Source: Podarcis pityusensis (Eukaryota). From it: DNA of 64,000 nt. Below are positions 21,012 through 57,729 of this stretch, piece after piece (the first letter of the stretch is position 1; each line of letters begins with the position of its first letter). A program made the translations under genes and the position numbers. The DNA is taken from assembly GCA_964106645.2 (NCBI GenBank), contig OZ067046.1. One strand, 5' to 3'. The notes under the pieces are model-generated. The model saw only the letters and a list, made by a program, of their open reading frames with translations, did not search any database and was not told the DNA's origin.

Positions 21012-22329
21012 TAGTTCTCATAGACTGACATCTTAGAGGGATCATTAGGAACTAAATCATCTCCTGGTACCACACCTGTGATACTGTCCAAGTGATGCCC
21101 AGAAGCATCCCAGGTGTAAGAGAACATGGGAAATGTAGTTCCCATGGGTCTTGAAGATTGTGCTAGCTTGGACATCAGAACCAATGGGAATTAGCTTTCC
21201 CATGGATCTTTTATGCAATATATTAAGGCAGCCACCTTGTAAATTTGGACTAGAACGGGAAGGGAAAGGCTTTTGCCAGTCTGAATCCAGTTTTCTTCTT
21301 TAAGAGTTATGCAGATAAATATTCTGGCAAGTCAAAGATACAGTATATGAGGAATACAAGAGGTGGAGAGTCATTAAATTTCAGTTGTGTCAGTGAAGTG
21401 TTCATGACATGCCAAACGAGAAATGAAAAAAGGCAGATTCCTGTTCAGGGCCTGCAGCATGAGTAACTGGTTAAAGTGTGAAGCTAAAAGGCATACTATT
21501 AAGTCAGAGATAAGAAAGGAGCGGATGATCTCTGAGAGAACAATTGTTAGTTCTATTTTTGAAATATTTTCATTAGTCACCTTAGGGAGGAAAGTAGGAG
21601 CATCTATCTGAAATCTGCAGATGGTACCAAGTCATTCTTTTGTTTGCTTCTCCCACTCCTACCTTTGTATCTTTCCTCCTGCCATTCTGTCAAGCCTACT
21701 CAGCCTTGTCCCAGCCCATGTCCTTGGCACACAGGCCACCCCGCTATCTCACTCTCTTGTATGCCTCCTAGGGATGAGGGGAGAACTAGAATCCCCTCTT
21801 CCATTCCTTTAGCATGGTCTGGGTTTGAGTAGCTCTGCACTCTAGGGGGCAGTGCTTGCCAGTGTGCCAGGGCTCCTCTGTGGACCAACATGGAGGCAAG
21901 AATACCCCAAGAGGGCTAGCGAAGTGTGCTGTGACCACAGCAATAATTGCTAAAACAATTTAGAGATATTTGTGGGATGCGCCTGTGTGTAGATGTGGTT
22001 GAGTTCATGTTCATGCAAGTAAGCACACCTATCATAGGTCTGGAAGATATACAGGAAGTTACCTTAGACCAAAAGTGTGTTTGTGCATGTATGTCTATGA
22101 ATTTCTGTGCATTTGTAACCATGTACGTATGTATTTCTCAAGTAAATATTTATAACCTCTGCCATCCATAGTGCTAGGCACCCCATTGGTTTTTTTAAAA
22201 TAATATTAAAAAAAAGAACAAGAGAGTACATCTGTGCTATTTTACCTTCCATGGAAGATATGTCTGTACCATGCAATACGCCCCAGAGATTTGCCTTTAT
22301 TTTAGTCACCCCTTTTATTGCTGAAAAGG

Positions 22330-23700
22330 GTTATCCAGTTTATCAATCATTACAACAAGTATAAACAAAACCAAATAGATGTTAGAAAAAGACAAAAATA
22401 ATTTTAAGAAATGACATCAGATCAGATACTAGCTTTTGATATTTCAATTTTGAAAGATACTTAAATTATGAAACAAAAAGGAAAATTATGTATAAGATCA
22501 ATTTAGCCTTATCATGGGGAAATTATGTGCAAAGCAGAAGCGACTATGAAATAATTAACTCAGAATTACAATACAGTGCCTTCATGTCACCTTCCATCAA
22601 ATAGCATATTGAAACATATTTAAGGGCATTATCTATTACTAGTTTCAGTTTAATAACAAGGCAAAAAAACTGAATTACCATGTTGGATGCTCAAAAAGCA
22701 TTTGATATTGTAGAGAAGCCTTTGTTAAAAAGCAGTATTAACTACATTTATTTTGAGAACTCAAGTTTGTGAATTAGTTTTCAAGTATTTATGATAGACC
22801 CATTCCTAGGATTACTCCAAGTAATAGATGGTCAGAAACAGCATTATTGAAAAGAAGAACATGACAGATTTGTTCCCTTTTGCCAATATTTTTTATTTAG
22901 AGTACTAAAATCTGAGCAATAGCAGTAAGAACTAATTAAAGGGATGCCTCTTAGAAATAAAGAAAATTAACATTAAATGTTGGTGATAGGGTGTTAATGC
23001 TATCAGATCCAGTGCTTTTTAAAAAAGTATAGCTAGATTTCCAGTAGTTAAATAAATTAAAGTAGGACATTTTGGGAATAATCATAATACCAGTCTTTAA
23101 AGTTATAGCTTTTTGTAAAAACCCTTGGAAGAAGAAAGTTAATTATTTCTATGTATTACTTAGCAGTAGACGTTAAAGAATTTTCTTTGACTTATTTGTG
23201 AATCAAAGAGATTGCAACCAAGAACAGCAAGAATTGAATGTAATTCTAAATCGTTTTTGTTTTTACATTATGAATAAATATACCCAAATAAAGGAGAAAA
23301 TGATAAAGGTATACATTGACAGGATTAAAAGATCTGGACTTCCATGCAAGATTCTATATCAAAATAAGCAAAGGCTCCCTAAATCTGTTGTGGTCTCCTC
23401 CCAACCCTCTGGATCAGATCTGGGGAGGGTGCAGGGTACATGGGGCTTAAGCAGGGTGAGTTCCATTGCACAAGTATAAATCCTTGCACTGACAGAAGAA
23501 ACTAGTTGGATAATACCCTTAGAGATTCCTTTTATAGACATTCATATGGTTCAGTAAAAAACAATGGCAAGTAAATGTCTTGACTAATCCTCTAATTCAT
23601 TTCTTTTATACACGTTGGAAAATGATCCAGCTTAAGTCCTGTTATTGTCTCATATGCATCCTCCTAGTTTAATGATTAGGTTCAAAATTTTAGATTTGAT
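22330..23700 (+). mobile_element. Highly decayed L1/Tx1-type LINE ORF2 (reverse transcriptase) fragment
   Basis: LDAQKAFDIVE at 22683-22715 (RT motif LDAEKAFDxV); decayed GTRQGCPLSP equivalent near 22855-22895; many stops and frameshifts. Boundaries approximate. Confidence 0.6.
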
Positions 23701-23960
23701 CCAGTTCAAGATCACAGTATATGTTTAAACCTGACAATTGTGTTAGTTCTTAAAATAGAATAGAATACTTTCTACTATGTATAGATATGAATAAAAATTG
23801 AGGACAATTTTTTGTTTGAAAATGTTTATTATAGCATATATTTAGTTATTTATAGTGCAACTCCATGCATGTCTTATCAGAAGAAAGTCCCATTGAGTTA
23901 AATGGAACTTACTCCCAGGTAAATTATTGGAGTTCATCCTTAGTGAGCAATGTTGGAATA

Positions 23961-24200
23961 CAGTGGTACCTCTAGCTGCGGACTTAATCTGTTTCGGGGT
24001 GCTCTTTGCACCCCGAAAAGTCTGCAACTAGAGCGCCTCTTCTGCGCATGTGCGATCGAGCGCTTCTGCACATGTGCGAGGTGCGCAGATCACTTCTGTG
24101 CATGTGCACGTGGAGAACCCAAAGTAAACACTTCCAGGTTTGCCACATTCATAAGTTGAAAGTCCATAACAAGAGCGGAACGCAACTAGAGGTACCACTG
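23961..24200. mobile_element. Tigger/pogo-like MITE, family B
   Basis: TIRs cagtggtacctctag...ctagaggtaccactg; TA flanks; internal cttctgcgcatgtgcg repeats. Confidence 0.85.
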
Positions 24201-27200
24201 TACACTGGAACTTGGTTTGAAAAATTGTTAAGTGTACTTACAAGATACCATCTAAGGTATACAGTACTTGGTTTAATGGTAGAATGGGGAAGGGAAAATG
24301 AAAATGCATTTACGGAAAAGGTCAAAGTATTGTGAAATAGAAATAAACGGAGAGCCATAGGTTTGAGCCATGAATTTTTCTGGGTGACTGAAATATAAAA
24401 CACTGAATGGAGCAGGCCAGTTTTTCCACAGACAACATGAAAAGAAAAGTGCCTGTACATTTTGCTTCATATATCAGACGCTACAAATAAATGCTAGAAA
24501 CGTACCTGTTTAAAAATGATAGCTGGGGATCTGGAGAACATTGTTTTTTATTGGGGTGGGGGTGTCCCTACCCTGCTGAACACCCATGCGGAGAACTGTA
24601 TTTCTGAAAGAACTCCACTTTTCAATTTCAAAGGCACTGATGGAAAAATCATTTTATATTTTTGTATAATTGTTATAACTTCCCATCAGCAGAGTTGCTG
24701 CTGTTTGTTGGAAGGAGAAACTGCTTCTTGTTTTTTAATTTTTGTATAGTAGTATGGAGGCAAAAGCTGATCATAAAAAGTGAAATTCACATCAAATGTG
24801 AATTTCAGTGGTATCACAGAATTCTGGTTCTTTCACATTATAGTATGCTGTGTGAAATGAAGCATAGCTCATTCTGCCTATCTAGTAGCTATCCTGGGAG
24901 TTCTCATCTGACAGGCACAACTGGAGGCAAAAAATAGTGATAAGTGCTCAAGTGGACAATTCTTATACTTAGAAGGGGATATTATTTGAATATTATGAGA
25001 TTGTTTAACTTTCTCTTTTAAACCACTGCATTGCCAGGAACAACTTTGAATAATAGCAGTTTGATACAAAAAGACACAGCAGTAAATTATAAATAGTAAA
25101 TTGTATTAGACTACAGTTGAATATAAAAACATTTATAGAATTAAAGGCTCAGTTGTACCAATCCTTCAATACAAAGTACAGTGACATTACTGACTTTCCA
25201 ATAGATAGAACACTGTTCTCTAAGTATCTGCAGCTATACTTGCAATAAATGTTATGAATTCGGGTAAATATTATTTTGACTACTTATTTGCAAGAGTAAA
25301 TAAATATACTGTTTATGGAATACTGTTATAGTTGCTAAAGCCCAGAGTGCAATGCACTAATAGCTGAATTGTGTCAGTAGTATTAGTGCCACTTTTCATA
25401 AAATAGCAACTTCTTTGCTTGAGAGCACCTCCATATTTTAAGTATTCAGTGGAAAAGTTGTATTAAGTGGGAAAATACATGTAAGACATGATCTCAATCA
25501 GAAAATGGGACAAATTAAAACACTGAAATGAAATGAAATGAAATCAAAGGATAGACACACTTACTTCATTTGGGCCCACAGAAACTGAAGGCAAGAAATG
25601 TCCATCTAGGTGAAGATGGATTTGCGCATAAGCAGGTTATGGAAACAACAGAGGAAGCCACACGGTTGACCCAAAGGTCATGATCAAGCACCCCTGTGAG
25701 AGGTTTTGTTTCAGCCACCTTTTGAGGCAAACTTGGGTAATCGAAATGCAAATCTCTATTTTCAAAAGGGGCCATGGATTCTGCATAAACTATCCCTTAC
25801 AATATTCTATAAAATCATGTGACAGTTTCTTAGGATGTTGAACCAAACTCTAAACTACATGAAATAAACAAAGTGAGATAAACAAAGAAAGTGGTGCAGT
25901 CATGAAATGTGGACAGGAATAATATATTAACCTGTTTCAGCAGAGTAAATAATAAATTGGATCTGATGGAGGGGAAGATGGCAGAGATACCAGTTCATTC
26001 TACATGGTACCGCTGAATCCAAAGTCACTAGTTACATCTAATAAAAAAAGAAAGTCAGGGTGTTGCTTTAGTAGAAAAGTTAACTTGTAAAAAAACCCCA
26101 AAACCCCAGAGGAAGTCATTGACAGCATACCTATTTTATCAAGAGATGAGGTTGCCATAAATGTTATTTTTCAAAAGTCCAATTAAACAAGCCAACAAAG
26201 AAGAAAGGTGGTGTATCCACAGATAATAGAAATCCACCAGCAGAATGGGGAGGGAGGCAATTTTTATTTATCAAATTATTTATCTCCCAAAGGAGTCCAA
26301 TGTGGCATTTTTGGAGATCTGCCACTGGTCCCACCCCTGGTCCATTCCTCTGACAGACTCCTTCCATCAGCACATGGCTGCCACTGAAGACTACCCATAA
26401 TGTTCAGCGTAGCTGGTGTGCCTTAATTCTGCAATTTCTACTGTGAATTACGGACTGCAACTTGGTTTATTCAAGGTGCGATTGGCTGTTGCTTTGCTGT
26501 TCAGCGTTGCCTCTACCGTTATGATTTTGTTTAAGAACTGAGCTAGTGTGCTACAGCACTGAGGCACCAGCTCAAAGGCCAGAATGTGGGCTTGCTGTTG
26601 TCCCTTACGATGCTGCCAGGACAAAGTGGGACAGTAGAGTGGCAGCTGCCTTTGGTCAGGCAAGTAGCAAGTAGGTGTGTGAGCCTATTTTCCTGTGTAT
26701 CTTTTCCTGGGAAGTGGAGCAAAGCTTCACTTGCCATGCAATTAGGCTTTGCCTGCACTGGCAATAGTGTTGCTGCTGCAACTGTTAAAGAGAAACTGTT
26801 TGGTAATATCTTATTTCTTCGTTATAATTAATAATTACATTTCCTATACAACTCAAGAGTGGCCAAAAAGCAGAAATATAGAGGCTGGAAATTTAAAGCT
26901 GTATCTGTTCTCCAACAGTGATCCTTATGAGAAATCTGTCTTTGACTTTTGAAAAATAGCATGAAAAGCTACCTTAAGTCTTAACAAAACACAGCATTCT
27001 TGTCAATACGCATGCTGTATAGACCAATATTTAATGTATACTTAGCTACATGTACATCCTTGTTAACACACAACACATTCAAATGTCTTTAAATTAAATG
27101 CCACAGTTTGAAAATCATTTGTATTTGATACCTGATTTGTCAAGATAGTAAAAAAATTACAACGTAAGTGATCTGTCATACATGTGTACAACCAATGTTT

Positions 27201-27350
27201 TTACACACAAACCCACACACCCCATGCTACCAGTTTTCCAACTGGAAATGAATAGATTGGAATGAATCTGGTACAAATCTGAAAACGATGGCAGCGTTTA
27301 GTTAAATTAATAAACTCATGAAACATTTACAAGTACTATGTTAGGGGCAG

Positions 27351-27484
27351 CTATGAAGAGCCTTTCTTCTTCTGTTCCAGCTCTTGCAGACGCTCTTCTC
27401 TGAACTGGGCATGTTGTGTCCCTACTTTATGAGCAGTCTCTGTCGCTGTAATGTCAATCTGGGCATATTTAGTTGATCCACTCC
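27351..27484 (-). CDS. DOK7: DOK7 long-isoform terminal exon (exon 11)
   Basis: Acceptor ttttttgccatag; phase 1; (G)SGSTKYAQIDITATETAHKVGTQHAQFREERLQELEQKKKGSS*. Confidence 0.8.
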
Positions 27485-29475
27485 CTATGGCAAAAAACAT
27501 TGCCATGGTTATAACATCTTCATGTACTTTCACCTAAGATAATTAGGTAAGAATACAATAATACTCAGTTTGATGTCACACACAGCACAAATAATAATAC
27601 CCACACCAGAACTTAAAAGCTATAATCTTTGTTACTGGAAAACATAGCATCAAGAAACAGTTAAGCTCTTGTAGCTCAGAATCCAAACAAACAAGTGGAA
27701 CCTACAACATAATGTTGCAGTGTATCAGCACTTCTGTGGGAATGTTCAGGGATGCAGGAGAGGATATATTGCTTGATTATATCCTTTCCAACTTGTGTTA
27801 ACAAGTTCTACAATTTAGCATAGTAACATTCCCCTTTTTAAACTTGCACAGCGGATGCGTTTGCTCAGGCTCGCTAAAGCCTCTAAAATAGGGTACCTGG
27901 TAATTTCCCTTTTAGTCCCTCATAAAAGAAATAGACACAATACAGTCTTCTATAAAAGTATAAAAGAGTTTACTCACTCACATTCTGTCACAGATGGATC
28001 CCAGAAGGCATACTTAAGTTATAAAAGTAATATACCTGGAATCTATCCCATAAAGAGATAGTCCCTTTGTCCTCTCTTGGCTGGAAGCCAAGGGAGCATC
28101 TTAGGCTAAAAGCAGATGTTGCTTCTTTGACGAATGTAGTCAGAGAGAGAGAGAGATGGTGGCCAGTCCTATGCTTTTGTTCCTGCACAGGTGAGGCCAT
28201 GCCCACCTCTGGTCACATGTAGAGAAAGCCTGTCCCAGCCTAGGAGGAAACAGGAAATTCCGACTGGCTGGTCCAGACATCCCCTTTTTATGTCCACTCT
28301 AGGGATGTTGTACTTGACTGCTCTGTGTTTCACATCCCACAACTTCCCCATTAGTAGTGCTCCTGCTCAGGACCATCTTTCCTTCCACATCGTTTTCCTG
28401 CTGGAAAGATGCTTGTCCTCATGAAGCAGACCCAGATGGGCTGCTTTGTACCCAATGGGAAGATGGAGAGCATCTCATCCTCCTGGACACTAGTTTGCTA
28501 GGGTAGATGGGGCACTGCCCCACAATCAGCTGCCGCCTGTTTGCTTTTGCACTACCAACCAGTCCAGGAAGTATCACTACTTGTCACTTTCCTTCTCCTT
28601 AATCTCAGCATTGCGCCTGTAGGGATGGAGAAAAAGCTGGAGCTGGTTTGGACTGCCAGCCATGGGTTCTGTTGGTCTCTTTGTCTTCCACGCTGCCAGC
28701 CCTAATGAATATCAGCAACCGCTGCTTCCTCCCAGCGAAGGAGTTGTAAAAGGTTCTGAAAATATGCAGCTGCAGAACCCTATTGTAGGAATGCACTTTT
28801 TAAGTACCAAAATTGAATCCACCAGAGCTATTTCCTTCCTCTCTTCAGTTACTTCCTTCCAATCTTTCTTCCTTTGTCCCTGCCACATCTGATGAGCTGA
28901 CCACCCTATAATCCTGACCTAACCTGTGTTTTCCTGGCTTCCAGCTGCCATCAACTGTGCTCTTTTCCACATTATCATTTTTAAATTAATTTTATTAAAG
29001 GTTTTCAACCTAATATATACCATAAAATTCCAATTAAACTAAAAATAATAATAGAAAACAACATACCAAACAGAAAAAAAACTAAACAGAAAAGTAAAAT
29101 AAAGCACACTATCAAACTCCTCTCCTCTGGCTCCTTCCCATTCGTATTCAAACATATCAAATATCTTGGCCTCTACTCAGTCCTCAGTTCTCCAATTCCT
29201 CAACATTTTTGCTCCCTTAGATATGGGTCACATCCAGAATGTCAGTATTCTGTAGGAGGGATTTCACTGCATATCAGAAATGAAGGTTTGCTCAATTAAA
29301 GTGCTGTGTTGTTCTGGGCCCAACAAATACACTTTTTAAAAAACATTTTTTTGTGTATAGCAAAGTAGCAGGGAAATGTATTAAAAAGTGTGGGATAATG
29401 GTTGACTGATGGGAAGATGTATAACTTCTGCACAAGCAAATAATGAATTTAAAGAAGATATTGTATCATATATTA

Positions 29476-29513
<38 letters not shown>

Positions 29514-31704
29514 TTATTATTAATTAAATTTGTATACCTCCCTATACCCGCAGGTCTCAGGGTGTAAGCTTTGTGCAACCAAATCAGGATGCTCCATGAA
29601 CAGATAATTCAGAAGAGCCAACAGTTGATCACCCCCTCATTTCCCTTGATCACTGTGATTCTGTCCTCAAATGGTTATCTTCCTACTTGTCTAATTACTT
29701 CTCCAATATCTCCTTAGGGGGAACGCTTCTGCTACTCTCCAGTGAGCTTCTTAAGAGTTCTGAGCTATTCTCTCTAAATACTTTGTGCCAGGGTAGTATG
29801 GCTTCCAAGAGCACCTACCCACTGCTGACAGACAGCTCTACACCCTTGTGCAAATTAATTGAAACAAAGCATGTTTTCTATCTTACTCGTAATCCTGTAC
29901 TCAAAACAAACACGAAAAGTCAGTTGATCATTATGGTGTCAGAAGCCTGCAGCCTATAGAAGGAATGATGCGCTCGCCACAATATATTGAGGTTCTGCGA
30001 AAGAGAGTTATTCCAGAGCTGGAAAAGAGGTATCCTGACAGTACTGGGATATTGCAGCAGGACCTAGTCCCCTGTCACACATTGAAAGTGGTAAAGAAAT
30101 TCATGACAGAGCAGCAAATAAATAGTTGGAGATTGTATATTACTTGAAATCAAAGAGAAAAAAATAAAGCATGTAGCAATAGTGCATCGGAGCTAACAAG
30201 TACCCAATAACCAGCGGTAATTGGTGCATCTGTAAAAGGGGACCATGCCACAGTGTAGCTTTGCAAAAGCCCCTTTAGGTCCCTGGAACAGCCTAAAATG
30301 TTATGCAAAAACAACGGAAAAATGCTTCAGTTGCTTTCAAAGATATTTTACCTCTTATGCTTGTACTAGGTTCCTGAAGTTCCAACTCCATGTAATGAAG
30401 CTGTTTCTTTGATGTGGGGCTGGTAGGAATATTAACATAGGTTGCCATTTCACCATGCAATCGATCAGCCATTGGCAGGTCTGCTGAATAACCTACTGCC
30501 CCTGCCATGAGAAGGAACATGCTTTTAAAAGATACATTAACTTAAGCCCCCTGAAGAAGTAAAAAGACATCAACTTGGGTGTAAGACAAGAAGGGAAATC
30601 TTTGAGTTCATGCACTCATGGAGTTCTCCTGCCTAAAAGCCCCCACCCTGTTCATTTCAGCATAGGAAATGGATTCTCCTTTGTGATATGGCTGAAAATG
30701 AATGTGCCAACCCAAGCATACATGACTTCCATGCACACCCAGAGTGCATACAGCTGTCGGTTGTGTTACAATGAGAGGGTAAGACTGCATTTTGAAAGTG
30801 CCCTTGCTCTGCGGGTACTGAGGATCAAACTAGACATGATGTTAAAGTACACCTTTGCATTTACAGTGGAAGTTTAAAAAAATGCAAATAGCATCAACTG
30901 GATGGGGGGGCAATGATAATGATCAGGATTGCAGCAGCTGGGGGTGGGGAATATAACCCTATCCTCCCCTGTTTTGTTCTGAGGGACATTCCTTCCTCTG
31001 AAGCTTGTGTTTTCATTGGGAGGAAATTACCCAGTAAAGGGCAGTGGAATAACTTACGAATAAAAGAACTTCTACAGATTCTCCACAAAGATTATATTGA
31101 TATACGTGCTTAGAAATGAGGAAAAGAGGACTAGGCAAGGCAAAGGTCTGATTAAAGTTGGGTATTCTATGCAAAACAAAACTCTCTTGGGGTGAGGTAT
31201 GCTTTGTAATACTCCAGGGAACCTTCCCTATGTGTTCATGGCTTTTTCATTTAGGAAGTAGCTCACGTTGTTCCTCCAGCAAGTGCCTGCTTGGGCCCTA
31301 ATCATATCCCCAGTGCTTTTTTTCGAGAAAAAGAGGTGCCAGAACTCACCATGAACACCTCCCTTGTTCTCTTATAACTGCAACGGCACACACCTGAGAG
31401 GTGCTGGAACTGAGTTTCTGCATATCCCCCATTAAGGGTTTGTCCGACGCCTTGTGTCATGTGGAGTGTTCCCTCGCCACCCATTGAACTGAATCTGTCT
31501 GCCTATTCATATGAAATCACCACCAGTCTGTGTACTCTGCTGCAAGTCAGTTTACTCACCAGCTTCTTCAGGATCAGATGGAGCGCCAGACTCTGTAGGT
31601 GGCATCATAAATTCATAGCTTCCTTTAGGACCTAGAGCATACAGAAATCTATACATTAATATTTTTTTGGAAGCTGCCCAGAGTGGGCGGGGTATAAATA
31701 ATAA

Positions 31705-31750
<46 letters not shown>

Positions 31751-34262
31751 CAATTTTAAACAACAATATGGACAGTAATAATAACGCACATGTCTCAATT
31801 CTTTAAGTTTCCCTGCAAAGGATTAAAAAATGTGGCTCAGTCAAGAAATATGGAGATTATCTAGGAAGTATTACATGCTTCTAAGAACACTTTGAAGGGA
31901 ATAAATACTACCACCGTTTGAAGAGTTTGCACCGTGCGCTAATCGGTCATGGTGCATGGGGTTCGGGAGTGCTGTGATACTTGCAACCTTCCCAGAGTCT
32001 TTTAAGACAGTCTACCTAACTGAATGACAGTAATAGCAGACACATCTGATTAGAAGTGGTACAGCTCCACAGAAGGACTAGTTCACCTCAATTGTATGTG
32101 AGGGGACATCTGGAAAATCAAAACTGTTAAACCTATCAAACTAGAGAGAAAAGTTTGTCATGGTACTTTTTACAATTTCTACAAGGGAACAGTTGCTTTC
32201 CCATATGGTGCAATCTGCACTTCAGGATCGGTACCACATAAGATGGACATAAAAATGAACTCCAGAAGATCATCTGTAAACAGGATTTTCTTATCTTTCA
32301 TGGAGCTTACTCCTCATTAAACTTCGTTTTCTTAAATAATTCAAACATAATTAATTCATCACAGGAACTCCAAGGACCGAGAACTACAGCAAACATTGCT
32401 TTGACCATGGGGATCCTACCAAAACCATTATTCCTGTGATGCACTTCCTCACAAAAGGTCTTCCAACTTGCAGTTTAAATGCAAAGATTACTGCCTGTGA
32501 CTTTCCACACACACAGCCCTTCCTATCTGAATAGAAAAATAAAGCATAACTATCTATCTCATCAAAAATACTGAGTACTTGCTTCTTTGACCTAGGTTTG
32601 TTTGAGGAAATTGCCTCTCCAAATACTATGCCTATCTACTTGTAAAGTTTGTCCTTTATATGCTTTCAGGGACCAAAATACTATCCTAGAAGCACCACCT
32701 GCTTTTAAAAAATCTCCAACTTAATACTAAAAATCTTTAGCTACATTTATGGTTCTATTGTGCCCAGTTGCTCAAAATAAATTGCTTTGTAGAGATATTC
32801 GTGGCAGTGGGGCAGTAATAGATAAATCAATTCCCTGTTTCTTCTTCCTACTACTATTCCCCCCACCTTTGGAGTCACTGAGAGATGAAGTCATTATTCC
32901 ATTGACTTTGCTTTGAACAAAAATTCAGCAAATGCTTCCTAAAGCTAATTCAGCTGATGAAAGGAATCAGTTAAAAGATTTTTCTATTTCCTATTGCAGC
33001 CTTTCTGATATCCATTAGATATCATTAACACTAAAAATATAACACAATTGACCACAATATAACAACTGCACATGACTAGTAGCCAAGGACAACAAAATTA
33101 GATATGTATTCCCACTTGCATGACAACAGAAATGGAATAGCCATCTCCAACCAAGTAACATAATGTCAACAGGAATTATTTTAATTGGCCTTGCACTTCG
33201 TTATGTGATAATAATCATTATTAATTTGTAAGAACAGATTACATATAGAAATGAACATAAAGTCAAAAGATTATTTGAAACCTATTTTTCCAAAAAATAA
33301 AAAATTGATTGATTTGGTTCTTAAGTAACTTCTGGAAAAATAGGTCAGCTTGGGTCAAGAAGGCTAATGCCTTCAGATGTGTATTGGATTTCAATCCTCA
33401 TATTTACTTCCAAGTCCTGCATGGCAGAAGCTCATGCCAGAGAAGACAAAGGTGATTCTGGTGGGATCTCTTTGGACTCTGGAGAGTTTGATTTGGCCCA
33501 GGAGGCAGAGGTTGGTTTGGCTGCAACTGACAGGGCTGTTATTTCCACATCTTTGGAGGTAGAGTAACTAGGAATGCTTATTGAAGGTAGTTGAGGGGGT
33601 TTTGCTATGTCTGACTATTGTAATGCTCTCTGTCTTGGACCTTGTTGACTTTGAAGACAAACTAGAACCTTCAACTAGTGGGAAATGTGGGCACACAGAG
33701 ATCCACACCCGCAAAAACTTGTCGGTTGGTTTCCATGGAGGAGGTTGTTTCCATGTACCATGCCGTTTCCTCTACTGAAATGAATGCTGGAGCCCATAGA
33801 AGCAGGATCTGATGGCACACATGACTCGTAAGGAAAATATACCCGATATGAAGCAAAGTTATAGGGGTGGGGATGGGAAGGAAAGAACAGGAGGGAGCTT
33901 TTGTTTTGTGTGCATGTACATACTTGCCCTAACCCACAAAGAAAGAGGATTAGGGCTGAAAGACCAGGTAAATATAGGTAGCTGTAAAATCAGCACAGTG
34001 TGAGGGATGGCACACATGAGCTTACAATTCTTTTTGATACAGAGTGAATTTATTAATACTTTGCTCTTCTTAAGCTTAAGACTTGTTTTTCTTTAAAGTC
34101 CAAGAATAAATATTGCAGTCCTGTGGATTGGGACCTTAACTTGTAATTTCATTTCCCTGAGTACTGAAATCAACAGGTGTCAACATCTAGCAAAAATCTC
34201 ATTGCCTCTTACCTGGGCTGGCTGGTAAAATTCCAGATGATAAAATGGACGTTTCCTTTTTT

Positions 34263-34316
<54 letters not shown>

Positions 34317-37300: not shown

Positions 37301-40300
37301 CCATCTCAGAATGGCCCAACACAATTTATTTTAATAAAAGTCTGAACATATGTTCAGTTATTTCTGATGGAACAAACTGATTTCTCCTACAGACTTAATA
37401 GTTGTCTTCAGGAACATTTGGCCCTCCAAAATGGTAAAAGAATCATTGGCACTTGTCTGTCTCAATAGACAGTGGAGTGTACCTCCAGGGGTGAAGCCAA
37501 ACAACCGTGTTAGCAGCACTAAAGTGAGCTCTCCGGGGCACAAGCCCAGGCAGTGTGTATGACTGCTCAGATGACAAGACCAAAGGCAAGCAGAGCAATC
37601 CATTTGGCCCCAGCTTGGCTGCAGGAGTTGCTGGAAGGAGGCGTGCAAGGTGCCCTCCAACCATCTTAGAGGCTCCACATAGTCCTGGGACAAGGTATGA
37701 AGGCTGAAGCTCAGCAAACCTGGGCTGGTCAATGTCTGCATGGGAAATCACCCAGTAACCTTAAGCATGACACCCTGAATTCAATGGAACAAAAGGTTGG
37801 ATATAAATGTAATGAATAAAATAACATTTACCTGTTGTTGTTAATGTTTTCCTGACGGTAACTGATTTTAGCTACCATTGGCACAAATATAGTAGCATTT
37901 ATCCGCCCATAAAATGCACACAATTCTACAAACAAGACTAGCATGTGCTCAGAACAATGATTTACCTTTAGCCCTCCACAGACCGGGCAAGGTGAAAAGA
38001 AAGCTCGAGTTGTCCCAGAAGGAGAGCTACACAGTTCACATGGGCTGCTGGAGACCCCAACGAATGTTGCCACATCAGTACTTCTAGAATCTAACAATTG
38101 TGCTTGTTGTCTTATATGTGACCACCTTGAAACAAAATCTATGCTTGCCTCAAGCGATGAGTCTTTGGCATGTTCCTGGGGGAGAGCTGCTTGCATGTCC
38201 CCTTCCCCTCTGTGCTCAGGAGAAGCTTGTGCTTCCAGATGCGGCAATGGCAGTTTGAGGTCACTAATTTCTTGAGATGATTCACCCTTGGATAATGAGG
38301 AATCTGAACTTGAACTTTGTGTGTCTTTAGCAGCTACCTGTAGCAAACTCCTGGGTGTGTCATAGGCATGTCTAAGGGAACTGGGAACTTGGTACTCCAG
38401 GCCAGGGCTCCTCAGGTGATCACCTGGCGGACAAGTGCATATACTCTGGTCTGAAGGGAGGTTCAGCGGCAGACTCAACAATGATCCAAATTCATCACCA
38501 CGGCAAATGTCCAGGCTCCCAGCATATGAGGAAAAACTTCCTGAGTAAGAAGAATGACTCCCAGTAGCTATCCCACTATCAGAAGAACTTTGGCGGCCTA
38601 TTTCTTGCAGTTGTCTGGATCGAAGAAGCTTAGGAGGTGGTTTGGTGATGCTGCGGACACCTTCTGAATGGGCCTTCTCCTCCCCAAGATGAATTCCCTT
38701 TGCTGCGGGCAATCCATGACTTTCTTGAGAAGTACTGGCTGAAGACTGGTCTGCCCAAATAGTCAATCTGCTCCCAATGCTAGCATCAGAATGGCTTGTG
38801 TCCGAAGATGAACTTGATAAGCTTCTGTCATCACCTAGGATGAAAGAAAGGAGATTGATGATTCAAGTGGAAATGGCTGAACTATAAAGAAAGATGATAG
38901 CTGGGTTATCAGCCATACTTCTGACTTTGACAGTTCAGGGAGTTCTAGATCACTACATCTGTGAGGGGAGTAACACTCAATTTAGAGAAACCAAGTCCCT
39001 TGGCTGCATTAGGGATTTTCCAGTGGGAAACTTCCTAGTGCAGCCAGTTCCAGAACGGGACCAAATTATGATTCATGCCAAACTTAATTAGGCCACTAGG
39101 CCAGAGGTACCCCACAACTGCTACAGGAGAATGAAGAACGGCAAATATACCCAATGACAAATTTCATCTCATCATCTCTCTAGTCTAAAGCCATGGCCTA
39201 GATGTGACTTTAGCTTTAGCTATTTTGAGGAGTCTAAGAGCTCGTCCCAGGGATGCAGGTGGTGCTGTGGTTTAAACCACTGAGCCTCTTGGGCTTGGCA
39301 ATCAGAAGGTCGGCAGTTCGAATCCCTGCAACAGTGTGAGCTCCCATTGCTTGGTCCCAGCTCCTGCCAACCTAACAGTTCAAAAGCACACCCAAGAGTG
39401 CAAGTAGATAAATAGTTACTGCTCCGGCGGGAAGGTAAACGGCGTTTCCTTGCACTGCTCTGGTTTCAGTGTTCCATTGCGCCAGAAGCGGCTTAGTCAT
39501 GCTGGCCACATGACCCGGAAAAACTGTCTGCGGACAAACGCCAGCTCCCTCGGCCTGTAAAGCGAGATGAGCGCCACAACCCCAGAGTCGTCTGCGACTG
39601 GACATAACTGTCAGAGGTCCTTTACCTTTTAAGGGCTCATCCGCACTTCCGCTTGTGTGATGCCTAGAAAACACATGTTCAAGGGCTTTCACCCTTGCCC
39701 GGCTGCTCCTTTCCAAAGTAAAACCTGCTCTCGCAAGAGATCAGAACAAATGGCAACCTGGGGAAAACCCAAATTCCCATTTGCTCTGACTGAGTGCTTT
39801 CCATGGGGGAAAGATGTGGGGAACAGGAAGTGCGGAAAAGCCCTTTATCGGGTAAGGGGACACCACTTGAGGGCACATTCACTCCCTGACCAGCTTCTAG
39901 GGGCTTGAAAGCCTGCAGTGGGTGAGATCAATGAGAGAGAAACACCCCATGGAGAGTCCTCTCTTTTTCCAATAGCACAGAAACACGGTGACCTGCCCAT
40001 GAGGAAAGAGAGCAACCCCCTCCTCTGTGGGCAGCCATGCCCCCCCCTTTCCCACTTGTTCTTGCAAATCAGTGGAGCAGCAGCAGGCGGGGAGACATCA
40101 CAAACAGGGGCGGTGGAAATTTCATGCCTCCCACAATCTGGTACTGCTGCTCAGGGGGAAATGGCTGTTCAGCCTTGGAACCAGGGCTGCAGAAGGCGAG
40201 GGGCCTCAGAGGCTGTGGGGCCCAGGAGAAGTGGTTGGTGAGTCAGCTGGAGAGGCCTTGTGGCCCACGTGCCACCACCCCTTATGTCAGAGGCCTGAGA

Positions 40301-43300
40301 AAACAGGATCAAATGCCCAGGTGGATGATGTACTTTGTCCTTACCTGCACTCCCATGATAACTTGTATGGGACAGAAGGCTGAGTCGCTTCTCTAACTGC
40401 AAAGCTTCATGGGCCACTCTCTCTTCCGTGCATGCAGGATTTATGCTGGGGTCTTTAAAAAATCAAAACCAAAGTGACAAATCACAACTGAGGCCTAGCT
40501 GTAAAAAAAAAAATGCTTCCACTTTAATAGTCTAAGTAGAGCACCTGGAGCAAGCATCAAGGCTGCCTGCGAACCTTAAACATGAGCACTTTGTTGCTTT
40601 ATAGTCAAGGTACTGGAGTTCTGTTCTTTCCTGCCACCCAAAATCTTTACACATAGCATCAGAAGGGGAGGTTTTTAATATCAGCTGCTAATAACTCCCT
40701 CCAGGAATGGTACCTCGGGTTACAGACGCTTCAGGTTACAGACGCTTCAGGTTACAGACTCTGCTAACCCAGAAATAGTACCTTGGGTTAAGAACTTTGC
40801 TTCAGAATGAGAACAGAAATTGTGCGGCGGCAGCAGTCAGAGGCCCCATTAGCTAAAATGGTACCTCAGATTAAGAACAGTTTCAGGTTAAGAACGGACC
40901 TCCAGAACGAATTAAGTTCTTAACCCGAGGTACCACTGTAAAATGATAAATTCATAATTCCTTCTTGGCAAACAATACTTGTTCTTCCATTTTCCAGTCA
41001 GGAATTTCAGTAATTATTACAGTTAATACATTTGTAAAAAGATATTTGAATAGCTAGACATCAATGCTATTTTCACCATTTATCAGATATTACTTTCCCT
41101 TCAGTGACAACCATGCCCTCATTTAATCTGGTAGGATGCACAAATTTTAATCTAGGTTGTTGAAGACCACACAGTGATTTCTTGAACCACTTTGAAGTTT
41201 AAGTGTTAATGTTCTAAATATTTAACAGCTGAAATCCTATGCACACCTATCAGAAAGTGAGCCCAATTGAGCCTACTGGGATTTACAGCTGAGTCAACAC
41301 TTGTAGAATTGGCCTGTAAATCATGTTTCTTCAAGGTTTGTCTCATTCTATGAGATACAACTGAACTAATGATGCTTGGACTAAAAATTTGGGGTGCTAA
41401 TAATGTATTCATGTATTTCAAACTACACAATATGATTGTTTCCTTCTAACCAACCAGTTGTTGTTGGCATCCATCTGTCTCGAGAGACAATGGAGTCTGC
41501 CTCCAGGGGTGAAGTCTAACCTTTGCGTTAACAGCACCAAAGTGACCTCCAAAGGGTGCAAGAATGGGCAGTGTGTCTGGAGGTCCTGGGCTGCCCAGGC
41601 AACAACCCGCCCCCTTGGCCTCGCTGAGGTGGTCCAAAGAAAAGCAGAGCAATATGTTTGGCATCAGCTTGGCTGCAGGAGTTGCTGGAAGGAGTGTATC
41701 CAACCATCTTAGGGACTCCACTCTGGATTTGTCTAGGGTTTACTCCTGAGACTTTTCTTCTCCCAGAGATATCCCAAAAGGCAGCGGAGGTTTAGGATCA
41801 GAATTTTGCTTCTCCGAGGTTGAGCCCCATCTGTCCTTACTTCCCTTGACAGCAGTCGCTGCCTTCTTGACCATTGGCCCACTGTGGGTCTCTTCTGCTC
41901 AATCCACCAGAGCCTGTCTTCACATGCAGGGCAAGTCCCTAACTCACCAAGGATTTAAGATCCATTGGCTACCCTCACTTGGTTTAGCCTGCCAGCCAGC
42001 CGTTCTCAGGGTGTAGCACCACTCTATTCTGCCTTGGTCAGACCACACCTGGAGTACTGTGTCCAGTTCGGGGAATCACAATTGGATATTGAATATTGAC
42101 AAGCTAGAACATGTGCAGAGGAGAGTGACCAAGATAATCAAGGGTCTGGAAACCAAGACTGATGAGGAATGGTTGAGGGAGTTGGGTATGTCCCATGGAA
42201 GATGAAGCAAGCTTGTTTTCTCCTGCTCTGGAGGATAGGACTTGAACCAATAGTTTCAAATTACAAGAAAGGAGATGCCAACTAAACATCGGGAAGAACT
42301 TTCTGACAGTAAGAGCTTTTTGACAGTGGAATGGACTTCTTTAGAATGTAGTGGACTCTCCTTGGAGGTTTATAAGCAGAGGATGTTTGGTCATCTGTTG
42401 TAGTTGAGATTCCTGCATTGCAGGGCATTAGACCAGTTGCCACTTGAGTCCCTTCCAACTCTACAATTCTATGATCCTATGATTCACCTGATACTAAACT
42501 GAACTAATAGCAATGCTCTTGATGGTTGCCTAGCAAGGAAAATTTTTGCTTTCAAAATTAATTACCTGGCAACTTCCAATTATGTCAAAGTTTAACAAGT
42601 TAATTTTCAGAGTAGTGTGATGCAACTCAACTCAACATCTCAAATTAAAGTTGGGTCCCCCTCTAGCTTTTTAACATTTATAAACATTTATGCAACTATA
42701 TGGGACACAGGTGGCGCTGTGGTCTAAACCACAGAGCCTAGGGCTTGCCGATCAGAAGGTTAGCAGTTCGAATCCCCGCCATGGGGTGAGCTCCCATTGC
42801 TCAGTCCCAGCTCCTGCCAACCTAGCAGTTCGAAAGCACACCAAAAAGGGCAAGTAGATAAACAGGTACTGCTCCGGCGGGAAGGTAAACGACGTTTCCG
42901 TGCGCTGCTCTGGTTTCGCCAGAAGCAGCTTAGTCATGCTGGCCACATGACCCGGGAAAACTGTCTGCAGACAAACGCCGCCTCTCTCGGCCAGTAAAAC
43001 GAGATGAGCACCGCAACCCCAGAGTCATTCGCGACTGGACGTAACTGTCAGGGGTCTCTTTACCTATGCAACTATATATATACCTTTTATTTAGACAATC
43101 CAAGGAAAAATGTACATGTAATTGTATTTTGATGTTTAATGATGACAAACATTTTATGCATCCAGAACCTCTTATTCCAATCAAAGTGAAATATATTATA
43201 CAAGCTAAACTCCCTTGTTACATGGTTATGCACAGTGCTATTTTTCTAGAAAAAGAGGTGCCAGAACTCACTATAAATGCACCCCTTGTTCTCTTATAAT

Positions 43301-46300
43301 GGCAATGGCGCCTACCTGGGAGGTGCTGGAACTGAGTTCCGGCTGAAAAAAGTGCTAGTTATGCTATACATCCAAAACTAACCTGGCAGGACTGGACGTA
43401 GACCAAAAGGGCCTTTCATTGGAGAGATGCCATGAACAATGCAATCAAAGAGAAAGCTGATCTTTTCTCCTTCCATGCAAGATAAAAAAAACACACCAGC
43501 CCCTGAAAGAAAGCAAAACGTTTAGGACGATTTTAATTCTGGATGAAGGACACATTGGCATATTTATGCAACATCAAAAGAACCTAAGGAGCAATCTATA
43601 TGCTATGCTGGCTCTAGAATTGCTTCCAGAAAGATCTTATCCTTAAGCGGTCACATTTCAGAGGTTCTTAACCTGTGTACCTGTGTACAGTGTTTCTGTA
43701 CTAGACCAAAGCACTATAATAATATGGACTTGTGGTTGCTGTTTTGGTCAAATTCCTGAACCAGAGAGGAAAAGGTGCTATCTTGCGCTACATTGTGAAC
43801 TTTTGTTTGTGAAGGGCAACACATTATTGGGCTCTTGTCTTAGTGGATAATTAAATATAGCAAAAACCACATAGTTGCAGAAGGCTTTTTTTTTACGGTG
43901 GTTTGGACACAATGAAACAAGAACCCGATCTTCTATCAAACATTTTGAATATATTATTACAGTCTAGAATGAATAGTGATAAAATGCTTTCAAAATGAAA
44001 TTTTAACTGCCTTTCCTTTTTAAATATTATTTTACTACTTATTTTTTTTCTAGAAATAATCCAAAAAGTCTTTTTTATTATTTCATTGACAAAAATGATT
44101 CTTAATTTTTCAGTCTGTTTCAAGTATCCCCCCTGAAACATTATCTAATATTTATCCACATTCTAGACATAGGAATAAAGTGAGTGAAATCTGGATATTA
44201 AGGCTCCAGGAAACCACACAATCCCTAAAATAGTCCATAGGGTTAGCTCCCAAATCCTGTAATAAACTGACATGGACTGGTTCACAGCTGTTTCAAATGG
44301 GGTATTTTTATTAGGAAATATTTTAATGACAGGGAGACAAAATTCTTTTGCAGGGGATCTGTTTCCTGCCCCCCCCCAACACCTGTTCTGAGGTGAATTT
44401 TGGAAAATTCAAACTCATAAAAATAGCTGCCTCCTTTGCTACTCACTAGGGGGAGCCATTATAGTGGACAGCAGTTGAATATCCATTAAAAAAACCAACA
44501 TTTTTACAGAGTAAGAATATTGTTCTTCCAACAGCTCAATTTAAAAATTCTTTTTTAAAAAAACTTGGAAATCCCTTTGAAAAAAACCATTTCTTTCTTT
44601 TAAAAAATTACCTTGCAAAACCCAAAATATGCTTTATTTAAAAATAGACTCAAGAGTTTGTGAGTATGCTAATAAATCAGCAAAATCAATCACTGAATCA
44701 AAGTTAAACAAAGCGGGAGAGGCAATTGAAATTAACTGGGTAAATTTCACAATGTTGAGTCAAATCATTATTTCTGTACAAGGAAGATGGAAGGCTTTCA
44801 GAAAGTGTATAAAAGAGATTCTCCAAGCTTATTCTGAGAAATTTTGAGAATGCACAGTTCCCTTGCTCCCAAAGGGACTACAAAATTCCCTGGCGCCTAA
44901 ACATTAAGTTCGGGGGGGGGGGCATTTGCATAGGTCTGTTTGAACTGTGATTAACAAAAAAATGGGAAAATACACTATTTTGATTGTGTGTGTGAGTGAG
45001 AGAGGGAGGGGGAGAGGGAGAGAGAGAGAGAGAGATTTGCTTAGCTGTATTGAAAGGTTCATCCATATTCATATTTCAATATTCATATTTCAACACAAAA
45101 ATCAAACCTCACAAAAATTCATTTTACCTCTAATTTATTGATGTCTACAATGCCCTATGAATGCTCTACATTACTTGACAGAATAATGTTTTTCCAGTTC
45201 TTGGAAGAGAATACATTCATTATCAAAGGGGCACAGCTAGCCAATGTGACTAAAAGCCATAGAACGGGGTGGGATATGTCAAGCTGTGCAAATAAACCTC
45301 CCCTTTCTGAGAAGAATGCACATCCACACAGTTTCACAGCCCCATAGTTGTTCACAGACATAATAGAACATTATATTTTAGGACCATTTTGCCACTTTAT
45401 TTGCAGCCCTAATATTTTTAATATATATATTCTTACATACAGATCCCTAACTGATGAGATGCTATCATCCTACAATTTTCTATATTCAAAAAGCTAATCA
45501 AAATTTAAGTGCAGAAAACTCACAGAAACCACACCGAGTTCCTCCTTCAAAGACAAATCCATTAGGAACAGCTCCGTAGCGTCGCAGATCTGAGAGTTTC
45601 CATTGTCCCATGATAGAGGGTGGGTTATCTTTTGCTAGTACTAGGATATCATTGCAAAAGTGGAGAGTTGCTGGACCACTCTCCAGTTTAGTTCCTGGTG
45701 CTACCACAACATGAAACCTGTGAACTATCAGAAGGAGGGAGAAATGAAAGTACAAGAGATTAATTTAATCATTTTGCCAAAAATAATTAAACAGTAATGG
45801 GACGCGGGTGGCGCTGTGGGTAAAACCTCAGTGCCTAGGACTTGCCGATCGCATGGTCGGCGGTTCGAATCCCCGTGGCGGGGTGAGCTCCCGTCTTTCG
45901 GTCCCAGCTCCTGCCCACCTAGCAGTTCGAAAGCACCCCTAAGTACAAGTAGATAAATAGGTACCGCTTTACAGCGGGAAGGTAAACGGCGTTTCCGTGT
46001 GCTGCGCTGGTGCTGGCTCGCCAGAGCAGCTTCGTCACGCTGGCCGCGTGACCCGGAAGTGTCTGCGGACAGCGCTGGCTCACGGCCTCTTAAGTGAGAT
46101 GAGCGCACAACCCTAGAGTCGGACACGACTGGCCCATACGGGCAGGGGTACCTTTACCTTTAATTAAACAGTAAAATGCGCACGAAGACTGGTTTCATTA
46201 CCACTAACATAAAAATGTTCATGCTAATCCATGTTCATATAATGACGCTTAGCAAGGCTACAAGACATAAAATAAAACTTGGTGCTGGTAACCTCTTTTC

Positions 46301-54402: not shown

Positions 54403-54602
54403 NNNNNNNNNNNNNNNNNNNNNNNNNNNNNNNNNNNNNNNNNNNNNNNNNNNNNNNNNNNNNNNNNNNNNNNNNNNNNNNNNNNNNNNNNNNNNNNNNN
54501 NNNNNNNNNNNNNNNNNNNNNNNNNNNNNNNNNNNNNNNNNNNNNNNNNNNNNNNNNNNNNNNNNNNNNNNNNNNNNNNNNNNNNNNNNNNNNNNNNNNN
54601 NN
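54403..54602. other. Assembly gap (200 N)
   Basis: Exactly 200 N, a round number typical of scaffolding joins of unknown true size. Confidence 0.99.
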
Positions 54603-56020: not shown

Positions 56021-57653
56021 ATCAACTTCCACCATTGAGCAATGTGAAGAAGTCACTGTGGGCAGCATATTACAGTCAAGCCAACATGTTCCATTTTTTC
56101 ATTTCATACTTAACTAATGTACTTTGAGTGACATACAGCATAGTATAAAACAAACAAACCAACAAAGCATAAATTGCAAAATACATTTCTAAACAACAGC
56201 TTTAAAACCATCCTAATAAAAAAAACAGAGAATCCAGCAGCAAACAAACATTGCATAAAATTACTATTGGATATTAGAGGGATTAAAAGGGTCAGATTAG
56301 AAGGCTTGTGATAATAGAAATGACCTTGCCTGGCACCAAAATATTATTAAAATAGGATGTAGGTGAGCCTCTCTGGGGAGAGCATTCTACAAGCAAGGAA
56401 CCAGTGCTGAGAAGGCCCTCTCTCTTTTAACTGCCTTATCTCAGTTTGAGGGAGTATGCAGAGAAGCCCTCTGCTGATGATAACAGGGCCCAGAGAGGTA
56501 CCCATGGGAAGGGGTGAGCCATTAGATACTGAGGTCCCAGGCTGTGGAGAAGCAGAGGGATTGGTCATGTAAGTTGCTAGGGGGAAGAGGTGTGCCAGAA
56601 GGGTTAGTTCACCCAGGCAGGAACCAAGCTGTCAAAGCTGGTCCTACCTTTAGGTGGTGTAAGGCAGCTGCTCCTGGCTAATTCCCCTAAGTCCCTGGCT
56701 ATAACCTTCAGTTGGAGGACAGAGCTCTGTGTGAGCTGCAAGGAACCCACACTGAACCCAGGAGACTTCAGGTATTGTTTCCCGGCTCTGGATTTAGTCT
56801 GAGACAGAGAAAAGAAAGGGGAGGGACTCCTGTCCCATCCCAAACGTGGTTTCACCAACATCTCTTTAACAAAGTAGTACACATGGAAAGAGTAGAAGTG
56901 TCCTCCATAATGTTAGTTTGAATGTAACTAAATTGCTCCATGCTTGCTTGACATGAAGTTCCATTGAGCCTAATAGAACTTCTTTCCAAGAATGAAAGAT
57001 TGCAGCCACTGTTATAGAATAAAATGGGGGACAAGATGATTAGAATTTTGAGGCTTTGAACAACGGATCCATGATCACAATAAAAATGTCAGCAAATGGA
57101 TGAATTAGGAAGTGTGAAAAGGTGCGAAATCTGAGTCTTCAGTACAGTATTTCTGGTCCTGTAAGCTCTACTGTGTGCTAACAAGCCAGCACTGTACAGT
57201 ACTAGAAAAATGTGACTTTTAAAGTTAAGGCTTTCAGTAGTGAGGCTCAATGCAATTTCTTGGAAGGATTGTTTTATATTTCATGCTTTAAGTTCTTTGT
57301 ATCTGCCTTTACAAAAGTGAATATCAGAATAGAAGGATCTGGTCTTTTAGGAACTGTCACAATTAACACTGTGGGACTAGATATGGAGCAAAACGAACAG
57401 AAGAAAGCCAGCAGATTCATGGGCTTCTTGCTGAGAGTGAACTTGGCAGATATTAGGTACTTGGGGAAGTAGTAGATGTGTCACTAATAAATAGTAGAGT
57501 TTGTGCTGGGTGCTCCTTTTGCTTAGCAAAGTTTGTACCTGGGTCAGCCTCCTTATATTACTACCACGTATCTGAACAACAACAACAAAAGTGGGAATAG
57601 CAGATATATTTAAACAGTATTTTTCCCCTCTGTAGGCTTCACTGGATAAAGAC

Positions 57654-57689
57654 ATGAAAATTCCTTGCCTGCATCCCAGGAAACATTAA
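57654..57689 (+). promoter_or_regulatory. uORF in the RGS12 5' UTR (MKIPCLHPRKH*)
   Basis: ATG at 57654 within the exon that starts at 57636 (acceptor ttttcccctctgtag); TAA ends at 57689, 40 nt before the main ATG. Confidence 0.55.
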
Positions 57690-57729
57690 CACTGCATTGC
57701 ACAGACTTTCTTTTCCAAGAAATACCAGC

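What the first reader, a model, noticed from the sequence alone, without database searches (positions are those of the whole stretch)
27351..34255. DOK7 long tail (exons 8-11) is an FRS2/Gab/IRS-like phosphotyrosine docking platform
Seen: four small exons beyond the canonical last exon splice in frame (43+72+150+134 nt) and add 132 aa. They carry SYEFM (YxxM), TYVNIP (YxN), and the pair QLHYMELEL / TKYAQIDITAT 20 residues apart, then a charged helix. Established: YxxM binds PI3K p85 SH2, YxN binds Grb2 SH2, and C-terminal tandem motifs such as LxYxxLDL...YxxID in FRS2, Gab1 and IRS1 bind and activate SHP2. Classical DOK7 (the MuSK activator at the neuromuscular junction) signals through the Crk-binding YQVP/YDTP sites, which are present in exon 7. 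Inference: the long isoform could couple MuSK or another RTK directly to SHP2/Grb2/PI3K, a signalling mode not normally ascribed to DOK7. Longer DOK7 transcripts may already be annotated in some species; the motif architecture is the point of interest. The 20-residue spacing is shorter than in Gab1 or FRS2.
Basis: partly seen in the sequence, partly recalled or inferred. Interest (0 to 1): 0.8.

Follow-up and report, generated by a model that had tools for sequence, protein, structure and literature searches.

The report
Conserved signalling tail of lizard DOK7
The nerve-muscle synapse adaptor DOK7 ends, in this lizard and in most jawed vertebrates, in an already annotated but apparently unstudied tail whose tyrosines closely fit the binding rules of the phosphatase SHP2 and the adaptor Grb2, and the short mammalian form that papers work on lacks it.

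Summary
Observation confirmed: four in-frame AG/GT exons add 132 aa to a Podarcis DOK7. They are not newly found. RefSeq P. muralis Dok-7 X2 has the same exons, and all 15 lacertid models splice out of exon 7. In two RNA-type runs one contig covers exons 7 and 8, with nothing past the donor. The tail is the default form outside placentals (104/120 in a tail-blind search). A 69-aa core is 87-91% identical from sharks to birds and opossum, as conserved as the PTB domain. Y607 (YVN), Y622 and Y642 are invariant. Y622 fits the published SHP2 N-SH2 rule at every position; Y642 fits C-SH2 with Gab1-like D+4, T+8 and helix. The PI3K YxxM is not general (42/138). No paper on the tail was found. Against: in mouse myotubes agrin phosphorylates only Y396/Y406; the 20-residue spacing is shorter than in PD-1 or Gab1; no binding was tested. 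Verdict: known isoform, unstudied and probably real SHP2/Grb2 docking module (about 0.65); a role downstream of MuSK is open (about 0.3). The scan noted the exon-7 switch only on this same window.

The parts
53730..53786 (-). DOK7 exon 1 coding part (PH domain start)
   Evidence: tblastn of P0122, residues 1-19; ends approximate
53519..53569 (-). DOK7 exon 2 (PH)
   Evidence: residues 19-35; ends approximate
49071..49316 (-). DOK7 exon 3 (PH)
   Evidence: residues 33-114; ends approximate
45525..45728 (-). DOK7 exon 4 (IRS-type PTB)
   Evidence: Pfam PF02174 E 1.5e-5
43384..43500 (-). DOK7 exon 5 (PTB end)
   Evidence: residues 183-221; ends approximate
40334..40453 (-). DOK7 exon 6
   Evidence: residues 222-261; ends approximate
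37966..38836 (-). Exon 7 with the Crk-site tyrosines YQVP (38394-38383) and YDTP (38364-38353); ends at a GT donor that could be read through
   Evidence: RNA-type contigs cover 37965-38836 and stop there
34213..34255 (-). Exon 8, 43 nt, poorly conserved linker
   Evidence: depth equals that of the exon-7 contig; mean column identity 0.36
31560..31631 (-). Exon 9, 72 nt, with SYEFM (YxxM, 31620-31606); lineage-variable
30352..30501 (-). Exon 10, 150 nt: YVN site Y607 (30442-30425), invariant P-x-S-P, and SHP2 N-SH2-type site Y622 (30403-30377)
27351..27484 (-). Exon 11 coding part, 134 nt: SHP2 C-SH2-type site Y642 (27473-27441), predicted helix 647-675 (about 27452-27366), stop
22300..27350 (-). 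Probable 3' UTR of up to about 5 kb (inferred); poly(A) hexamers at 27035, 26471, 26268, 22319, 22301
   Evidence: contig 16 of run X2 holds 5425 nt downstream of exon 7; hexamers; colinearity not tested

Best explanation
The tail is the normal and probably ancestral C-terminus of jawed-vertebrate DOK7 and works as a phosphotyrosine output module of the Gab/IRS/FRS2 type. Shown here: it is spliced onto DOK7, conserved, and its tyrosines fit known SH2 rules. Inferred: PH-PTB brings DOK7 to an activated receptor (MuSK is the known one); the receptor or a Src-family kinase phosphorylates Y607, Y622 and Y642; pY607-V-N binds Grb2; pY622 binds SHP2 N-SH2 and pY642 plus the following helix binds C-SH2, so that the pair recruits and opens SHP2. 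The outcome would be Ras-ERK output and/or a brake on the receptor, since SHP2 is reported to lower MuSK phosphorylation. The invariant P-x-S-P between the sites may be an ERK feedback site (own knowledge, untested). Reading through the exon-7 donor gives the short form without this module. The PI3K site is an optional, lineage-specific extra.
For: Exon model equals RefSeq lacertid models, 15/15 of which splice out of exon 7 and 12 carry exactly 132 aa. RNA-type contigs of two studies fit the spliced form, none past the donor. 104/120 tail-blind hits end in the tail. Core 60-63/69 identical in chimaera, shark, gar, tarpon, toad, chicken and opossum, against 82-92% for the PTB and 49-70% for exon 7. 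Y607, Y622, Y642 invariant in 28 sequences. N-SH2 rule (hydrophobic -2,+1,+3,+5; acidic +2,+4; PMC8591604) met at all six positions. C-SH2 ligands such as PD-1 pYATI and IRS-1 pYASI (PMC12878756) match pYAQI. Gab1 binds C-SH2 through D+4, T+8 and a helix from +5 (bioRxiv 10.1101/2024.12.23.630100); DOK7 has invariant D646, near-invariant T650 and a predicted helix from +5. 136/138 tails meet both rules. SHP2 acts on MuSK signalling (PMC13599456, PMC6935836).
Against: No phosphorylation or binding data. [quoted passage not shown] AAV-DOK7 rescues lethal DOK7 myasthenia mice, and to my knowledge it carries the short form. The spacing (20) is shorter than PD-1 (25) and Gab1 (32), and even PD-1 cannot span closed SHP2. 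Position +11 is Ala, not Gab1's Leu. Some placental tails lose the +2 acid (bat P0057). The AlphaFold model is poor overall (mean pLDDT 35; helix 55-67).
Confidence: 0.65

Rival explanations
1. The tail is a phosphotyrosine module, but for other readers or in another geometry: each site binds SHP2 or SHP1 singly or in trans across a DOK7 dimer, or the partner is another SH2 protein (PLC-gamma, p85, SOCS/CIS).
For: Spacing is below the known SHP2 bidentate ligands. DOK7 works as a dimer (PMC8277574), and a trans, dimer-bridging mode has been proposed for PD-1 (PMC7078208, title and abstract only). SH2 domains are only moderately selective.
Against: The N-SH2-type site precedes the C-SH2-type site as in Gab1 and IRS-1; acidic +2/+4 suit the KxK motif peculiar to SHP2 N-SH2; the spacing is never below 20 and stretches to 32 in some fish; modelling allows separations down to 10-12 residues (PMC13681993).
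Confidence: 0.17
2. The core is conserved for a phosphorylation-independent job: the C-terminal helix and flanks fold on a partner or on DOK7 itself (oligomerisation, autoinhibition, localisation, stability), and the SH2-like motifs are incidental.
For: Conservation runs well beyond the SH2 windows (about 0.92 over both cores); no tail phosphorylation seen in mouse myotubes; one myasthenia case carries a stop in the helix region of the human long form, p.Ser598Ter (PMC10256249; single case, phase and pathogenicity unproven).
Against: Three invariant tyrosines each in a different textbook SH2 context; the pair is not produced by shuffling; the Gab1 precedent already explains a conserved helix after the last tyrosine.
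Confidence: 0.15
3. The exons are a gene-prediction artefact or a separate small gene joined to DOK7 by annotation.
For: Some annotations split the tail off (fruit bat XP_036083238.1 named collagen-like; catshark scyTo_0008303/0008304). The 7-8 joint row itself was not printed.
Against: Same contig depth on exons 7 and 8 and none in the intron; hundreds of joined models from sharks to marsupials; a human transcript with exon 10 is in clinical use; spliced exon 10-11 junction in mammalian contigs L001-L004.
Confidence: 0.03

Closest known systems
DOK7 long isoforms in RefSeq/UniProt (P. muralis XP_028599395.1; chicken XP_420818.3; human NM_001301071.2)
   Same: Same gene and same tail exons; the window's tail differs from P. 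muralis X2 at one of 132 residues.
   Different: Nothing in structure. Annotated but, in the papers I could search, not studied; no Pfam family or PDB chain covers the tail.
Canonical mammalian DOK7 (MuSK activator; Crk via Y396/Y406)
   Same: PH-PTB matches PDB 3ML4 at E 1e-119; YQVP and YDTP invariant.
   Different: The canonical form ends just after the exon-7 donor (own knowledge: 504 aa) and lacks Y607, Y622, Y642 and the helix.
Gab1 C-terminal pY627/pY659 SHP2-activating element
   Same: PH-bearing scaffold with a disordered tail; N-SH2-type then C-SH2-type site; D+4, T+8 and helix from +5 after the last tyrosine.
   Different: Spacing 20 against 32; +11 Ala against Leu; no detectable sequence homology; Gab1 has no PTB.
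IRS-1 (pY895 YVNI, pY1172 LNYIDLDL, pY1222 YASI; rat numbering)
   Same: PH-PTB head; the same three motif types in the same order.
   Different: IRS-1 spreads them over about 330 residues, with 50 between the SHP2 pair, and has many YxxM sites; DOK7 packs the three into 36 residues. Atlas likeness to IRS2 (0.79) is within noise.
FRS2/FRS3
   Same: IRS-type PTB related to that of DOK7 (E about 3e-5 to 8e-5); Grb2 and tandem SHP2 sites near the C-terminus (own knowledge).
   Different: Myristoylated rather than PH-targeted (own knowledge); tails not compared here, since no tool returned a full FRS2 sequence.

Membership tests
DOK7 (vertebrate) | N-terminal PH plus IRS-type PTB closest to DOK7 | tested here: met
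   3ML4 E 1.3e-119 (with P0122, whose exons map on the window at 94-100%); PF02174
DOK7 (vertebrate) | Crk-site tyrosines YQVP and YDTP in exon 7 | tested here: met
DOK7 long isoform (annotated) | Splice from the exon-7 donor into the tail exons | tested here: met
Gab/IRS/FRS2-type SHP2 docking proteins (works like) | Membrane/receptor-targeting head with a long tyrosine-bearing tail | tested here: met
Gab/IRS/FRS2-type SHP2 docking proteins (works like) | N-SH2-type site: hydrophobic -2,+1,+3,+5, acidic +2,+4 | tested here: met
   Y622 meets 6/6 (rule); 136/138 tails meet the pair rule; sequence test only
Gab/IRS/FRS2-type SHP2 docking proteins (works like) | Downstream C-SH2-type site, hydrophobic +1,+3, with Gab1-like D+4/T+8/helix | tested here: met
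   Y642; helix predicted at low confidence; +11 differs
Gab/IRS/FRS2-type SHP2 docking proteins (works like) | Spacing that allows two-site binding to one SHP2 | tested here: inconclusive
   20 in 124/138, 21-32 in the rest; PD-1 25, Gab1 32; generic lower bound 10-12
Gab/IRS/FRS2-type SHP2 docking proteins (works like) | Conserved Grb2 site pY-x-N | tested here: met
   Y-[VI]-N-I-P in all 138 tails counted (selected on that motif) and invariant Y607/N609 in the 28-row alignment; Grb2 rule from own knowledge
Gab/IRS/FRS2-type SHP2 docking proteins (works like) | Conserved PI3K site YxxM | tested here: not met
   42/138 tails; birds YEML/YEVL; none in opossum, toad or gar models; 17% of shuffles hold one
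Gab/IRS/FRS2-type SHP2 docking proteins (works like) | Tyrosines phosphorylated on receptor activation; SHP2 bound and activated | not testable with these tools
   needs experiment; mouse myotube data are against it for agrin
Gab, IRS or FRS2 families (membership by descent of the tail) | Detectable sequence homology of the tail | tested here: not met
   the named hits to the tail are all DOK7; no Pfam or PDB hit; Atlas 0.79 is noise level. Short motifs could be below detection.

The most novel reading that the evidence does not exclude
The DOK7 studied since 2006 and used in gene therapy is a truncated read-through form. The full ancestral DOK7 carries a compact Grb2 plus two-site SHP2 module that is a direct link between MuSK (or another receptor) and SHP2, so that an exon-7 splice choice switches DOK7 between a pure activator and an activator with a built-in brake or ERK output, and variants in human exons 8-10 can matter for congenital myasthenia.
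Probability: 0.3. Interest if true: 0.8.

Novelty: new variant of a known kind. Interest (0 to 1): 0.55.

Why it matters
SHP2 is reported to dampen MuSK signalling and SHP2 inhibition is discussed as therapy, but the review and paper I read name no recruiter. A PTB-level-conserved SHP2/Grb2 module on MuSK's obligatory adaptor would supply one and is cheap to test with peptides. It also bears on which DOK7 form is used in models and AAV therapy, and on how variants in the long human transcript are read. The sequence itself is already in databases, and the mechanism is a known kind.

Tried and rejected
Pfam and PDB sequence searches of the tail: nothing. ESM Atlas: IRS2 at 0.79, noise level. AlphaFold on a 28-row alignment: mean pLDDT 35, even PH-PTB poorly formed, so only the C-terminal helix was noted and no fold search was run. 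Raw-read runs X23/X24 had almost no DOK7 reads, so no splice ratio. Ten paper searches found no study of the tail; the library lacks most subscription papers. The second homologue search did not reach placentals, so the balance of forms there is untested. dN/dS lizard against L001: pN 0.19, pS 0.79, saturated, so only qualitative. Rejected: PI3K as a core output; tail as a lizard novelty; tail as a separate gene. No lamprey or invertebrate tail was identified, so the origin is dated only to jawed vertebrates.

Full report
Locus. The window is from a Podarcis wall lizard: RefSeq P. muralis Dok-7 X2 (P0122, XP_028599395.1) maps on the minus strand as 11 exons from 53786 to 27354 at 89-100% identity. 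The head matches the DOK7 PH-PTB crystal structure 3ML4 at E 1e-119.

Observation. The four exons, their phases, splice dinucleotides and all named motifs are at the stated places and add 132 aa. Reading through the exon-7 donor instead would give an unrelated tail of about 45 aa.

Is it expressed? Reads were laid on 33900-38900. In runs X1 and X2 (two studies, a related species, RNA status guessed by the tool) one contig covers 38836-37965 and stops at the donor; depth in the next intron bin is zero. The depths in the two exon-8 bins (3.8/3.3 and 3.78/3.28) are what the same contigs give if they also cover exon 8. The joint row was not printed, because the tool cuts at the (TC)n repeat beside exon 8, so the 7-8 joint is inferred from depth. 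Contigs drop rare forms, so read-through is not excluded. The X2 contig holds 5425 nt downstream of exon 7, which fits 399 coding nt plus about 5 kb of UTR. Of 15 lacertid models all splice out of exon 7; 12 have the 132-aa tail, one uses a shifted exon-10 acceptor, one skips exon 10, one ends after exon 10.

Distribution. Exon 10 alone finds about 60 clusters, many of them full PH-PTB proteins ending in this tail. A tail search finds 582 proteins; those listed are named Dok-7 or dok7b, or unnamed, from sharks, rays, chimaera, gar, teleosts, amphibians, reptiles, birds and marsupials. A search blind to the tail, mostly birds and marsupials, gave 104 of 120 with the tail, 13 ending in V-N-T-stop right after the donor (mostly marked partial) and 3 ending after exon 8. 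Placentals keep it too: mammalian contigs L001-L004 show the spliced exon 10-11 junction (species not given, rodent-like by my judgement), and a clinical report uses human NM_001301071.2 with an exon-10 variant p.Ser598Ter (PMC10256249). So the tail is the default form outside placentals. That the short form is the derived or minor one is an inference from annotations.

What is conserved. The 69-aa core is 60-63/69 identical from chimaera to chicken and opossum, equal to or above the PTB domain and far above exon 7; the rodent-like tail has 49/69 and a fruit bat 39/69. Exons 8 and 9 are poorly conserved (0.36, 0.29). Y607, Y622 and Y642 are invariant, as are P611-S613-P614, D646 and much of the helix. 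The YxxM is not: 42 of 138 tails, with birds YEML/YEVL and none in the opossum, toad or gar models.

Fit to SH2 rules. SHP2 N-SH2 prefers hydrophobic -2, +1, +3, +5 and acidic +2, +4 (PMC8591604); L-H-Y622-M-E-L-E-L meets all six. C-SH2 ligands have hydrophobic +1, +3, such as pYATI and pYASI (PMC12878756); Y642-A-Q-I fits. Gab1 pY659 binds C-SH2 with D+4 capping a helix whose +8 Thr and +11 Leu contact the domain (bioRxiv 10.1101/2024.12.23.630100); DOK7 has D+4, T+8, Ala at +11 and a predicted helix 647-675 (low confidence). 136 of 138 tails meet both rules; shuffles gave none in 100,000, with the caveat that the patterns were written after seeing the sequence. YVNI matches the Grb2 rule (own knowledge) and the IRS-1 pY895 sequence. 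The spacing is 20 in 124 of 138 and never shorter, against 25 in PD-1 and 32 in Gab1; whether 20 can span both domains is open.

Mechanism. Shown: splicing, conservation, motif fit. Inferred: phosphorylation, Grb2 and SHP2 binding, activation, the receptor, and the outcome. SHP2 is described as a brake on MuSK (PMC13599456, PMC6935836), which makes a MuSK role attractive. But in mouse myotubes agrin phosphorylates only Y396/Y406 (PMC8277574, PMC8972003) and AAV-DOK7 rescues the mouse disease, so in placentals the tail is either not needed at the synapse or acts in other tissues or with other receptors. I put SHP2/Grb2 docking at 0.65 and a role downstream of MuSK at about 0.3.

Comparison and novelty. 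It is a member of DOK7 and works, by motif, like the Gab1 and IRS-1 tails; descent from those tails was not detected. The isoform is in databases; I found no paper on its function in ten searches of an incomplete library. Class: new variant of a known kind; interest 0.55.

Limits kept. The spliced model was searched exon by exon by reference; the joined sequence was not sent to any search tool, and database records (P0035, P0112, P0122) served where a full protein was needed. Exons were joined only inside local scripts, to check the frame and count substitutions. P0031 looked human when first printed, and P0047, P0056 and P0063 primate-like; they were left out of all later comparisons and nothing more was fetched for them. 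The N run at 54403-54602 was left alone.

Noticed in passing
window 38050-37966 (-): The end of exon 7 holds two CxxC pairs (CELC and CPVC) that could bind a metal. The second pair is invariant in the 28-row alignment (C540, C543); the first is kept in fish, toad and opossum but broken in chicken.
   Followed up: partly
window about 57400-58415 (+): A PDZ-type open frame resembling RGS12 lies head-to-head with DOK7. From memory human RGS12, HGFAC and DOK7 lie in tandem on one strand, so the order here looks rearranged. Identity not tested.
   Followed up: no
Neither was tested.
   Followed up: no
   Followed up: partly
P0106, P0052, P0013, P0065 (fish dok7/dok7b): In bowfin, catfish, rays and some sharks the region between exon 7 and the core is expanded by 300-400 aa; in bowfin and catfish it holds several more tyrosine motifs, including YxxM.
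   Followed up: no
P0057 (Rousettus XP_036083238.1): The bat DOK7 tail is annotated as a separate 'collagen alpha-1(IV) chain-like' gene, probably a misannotation.
   Followed up: partly
PMC10256249: A fatal neonatal myasthenia case carried p.Pro321Leu and p.Ser598Ter on the human long transcript; the stop affects only the long form. Single case, phase and causality unproven.
   Followed up: partly
L001-L004, about 400-470: The mammalian contigs are spliced at the last junction but carry intron-like sequence before the tail exons, and L004 has a different 5' part; partly processed RNA or alternative starts are possible.
   Followed up: no
window 36817-37670: Repeat-derived stretches in intron 7 attract many unrelated reads and contigs.
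   Followed up: no
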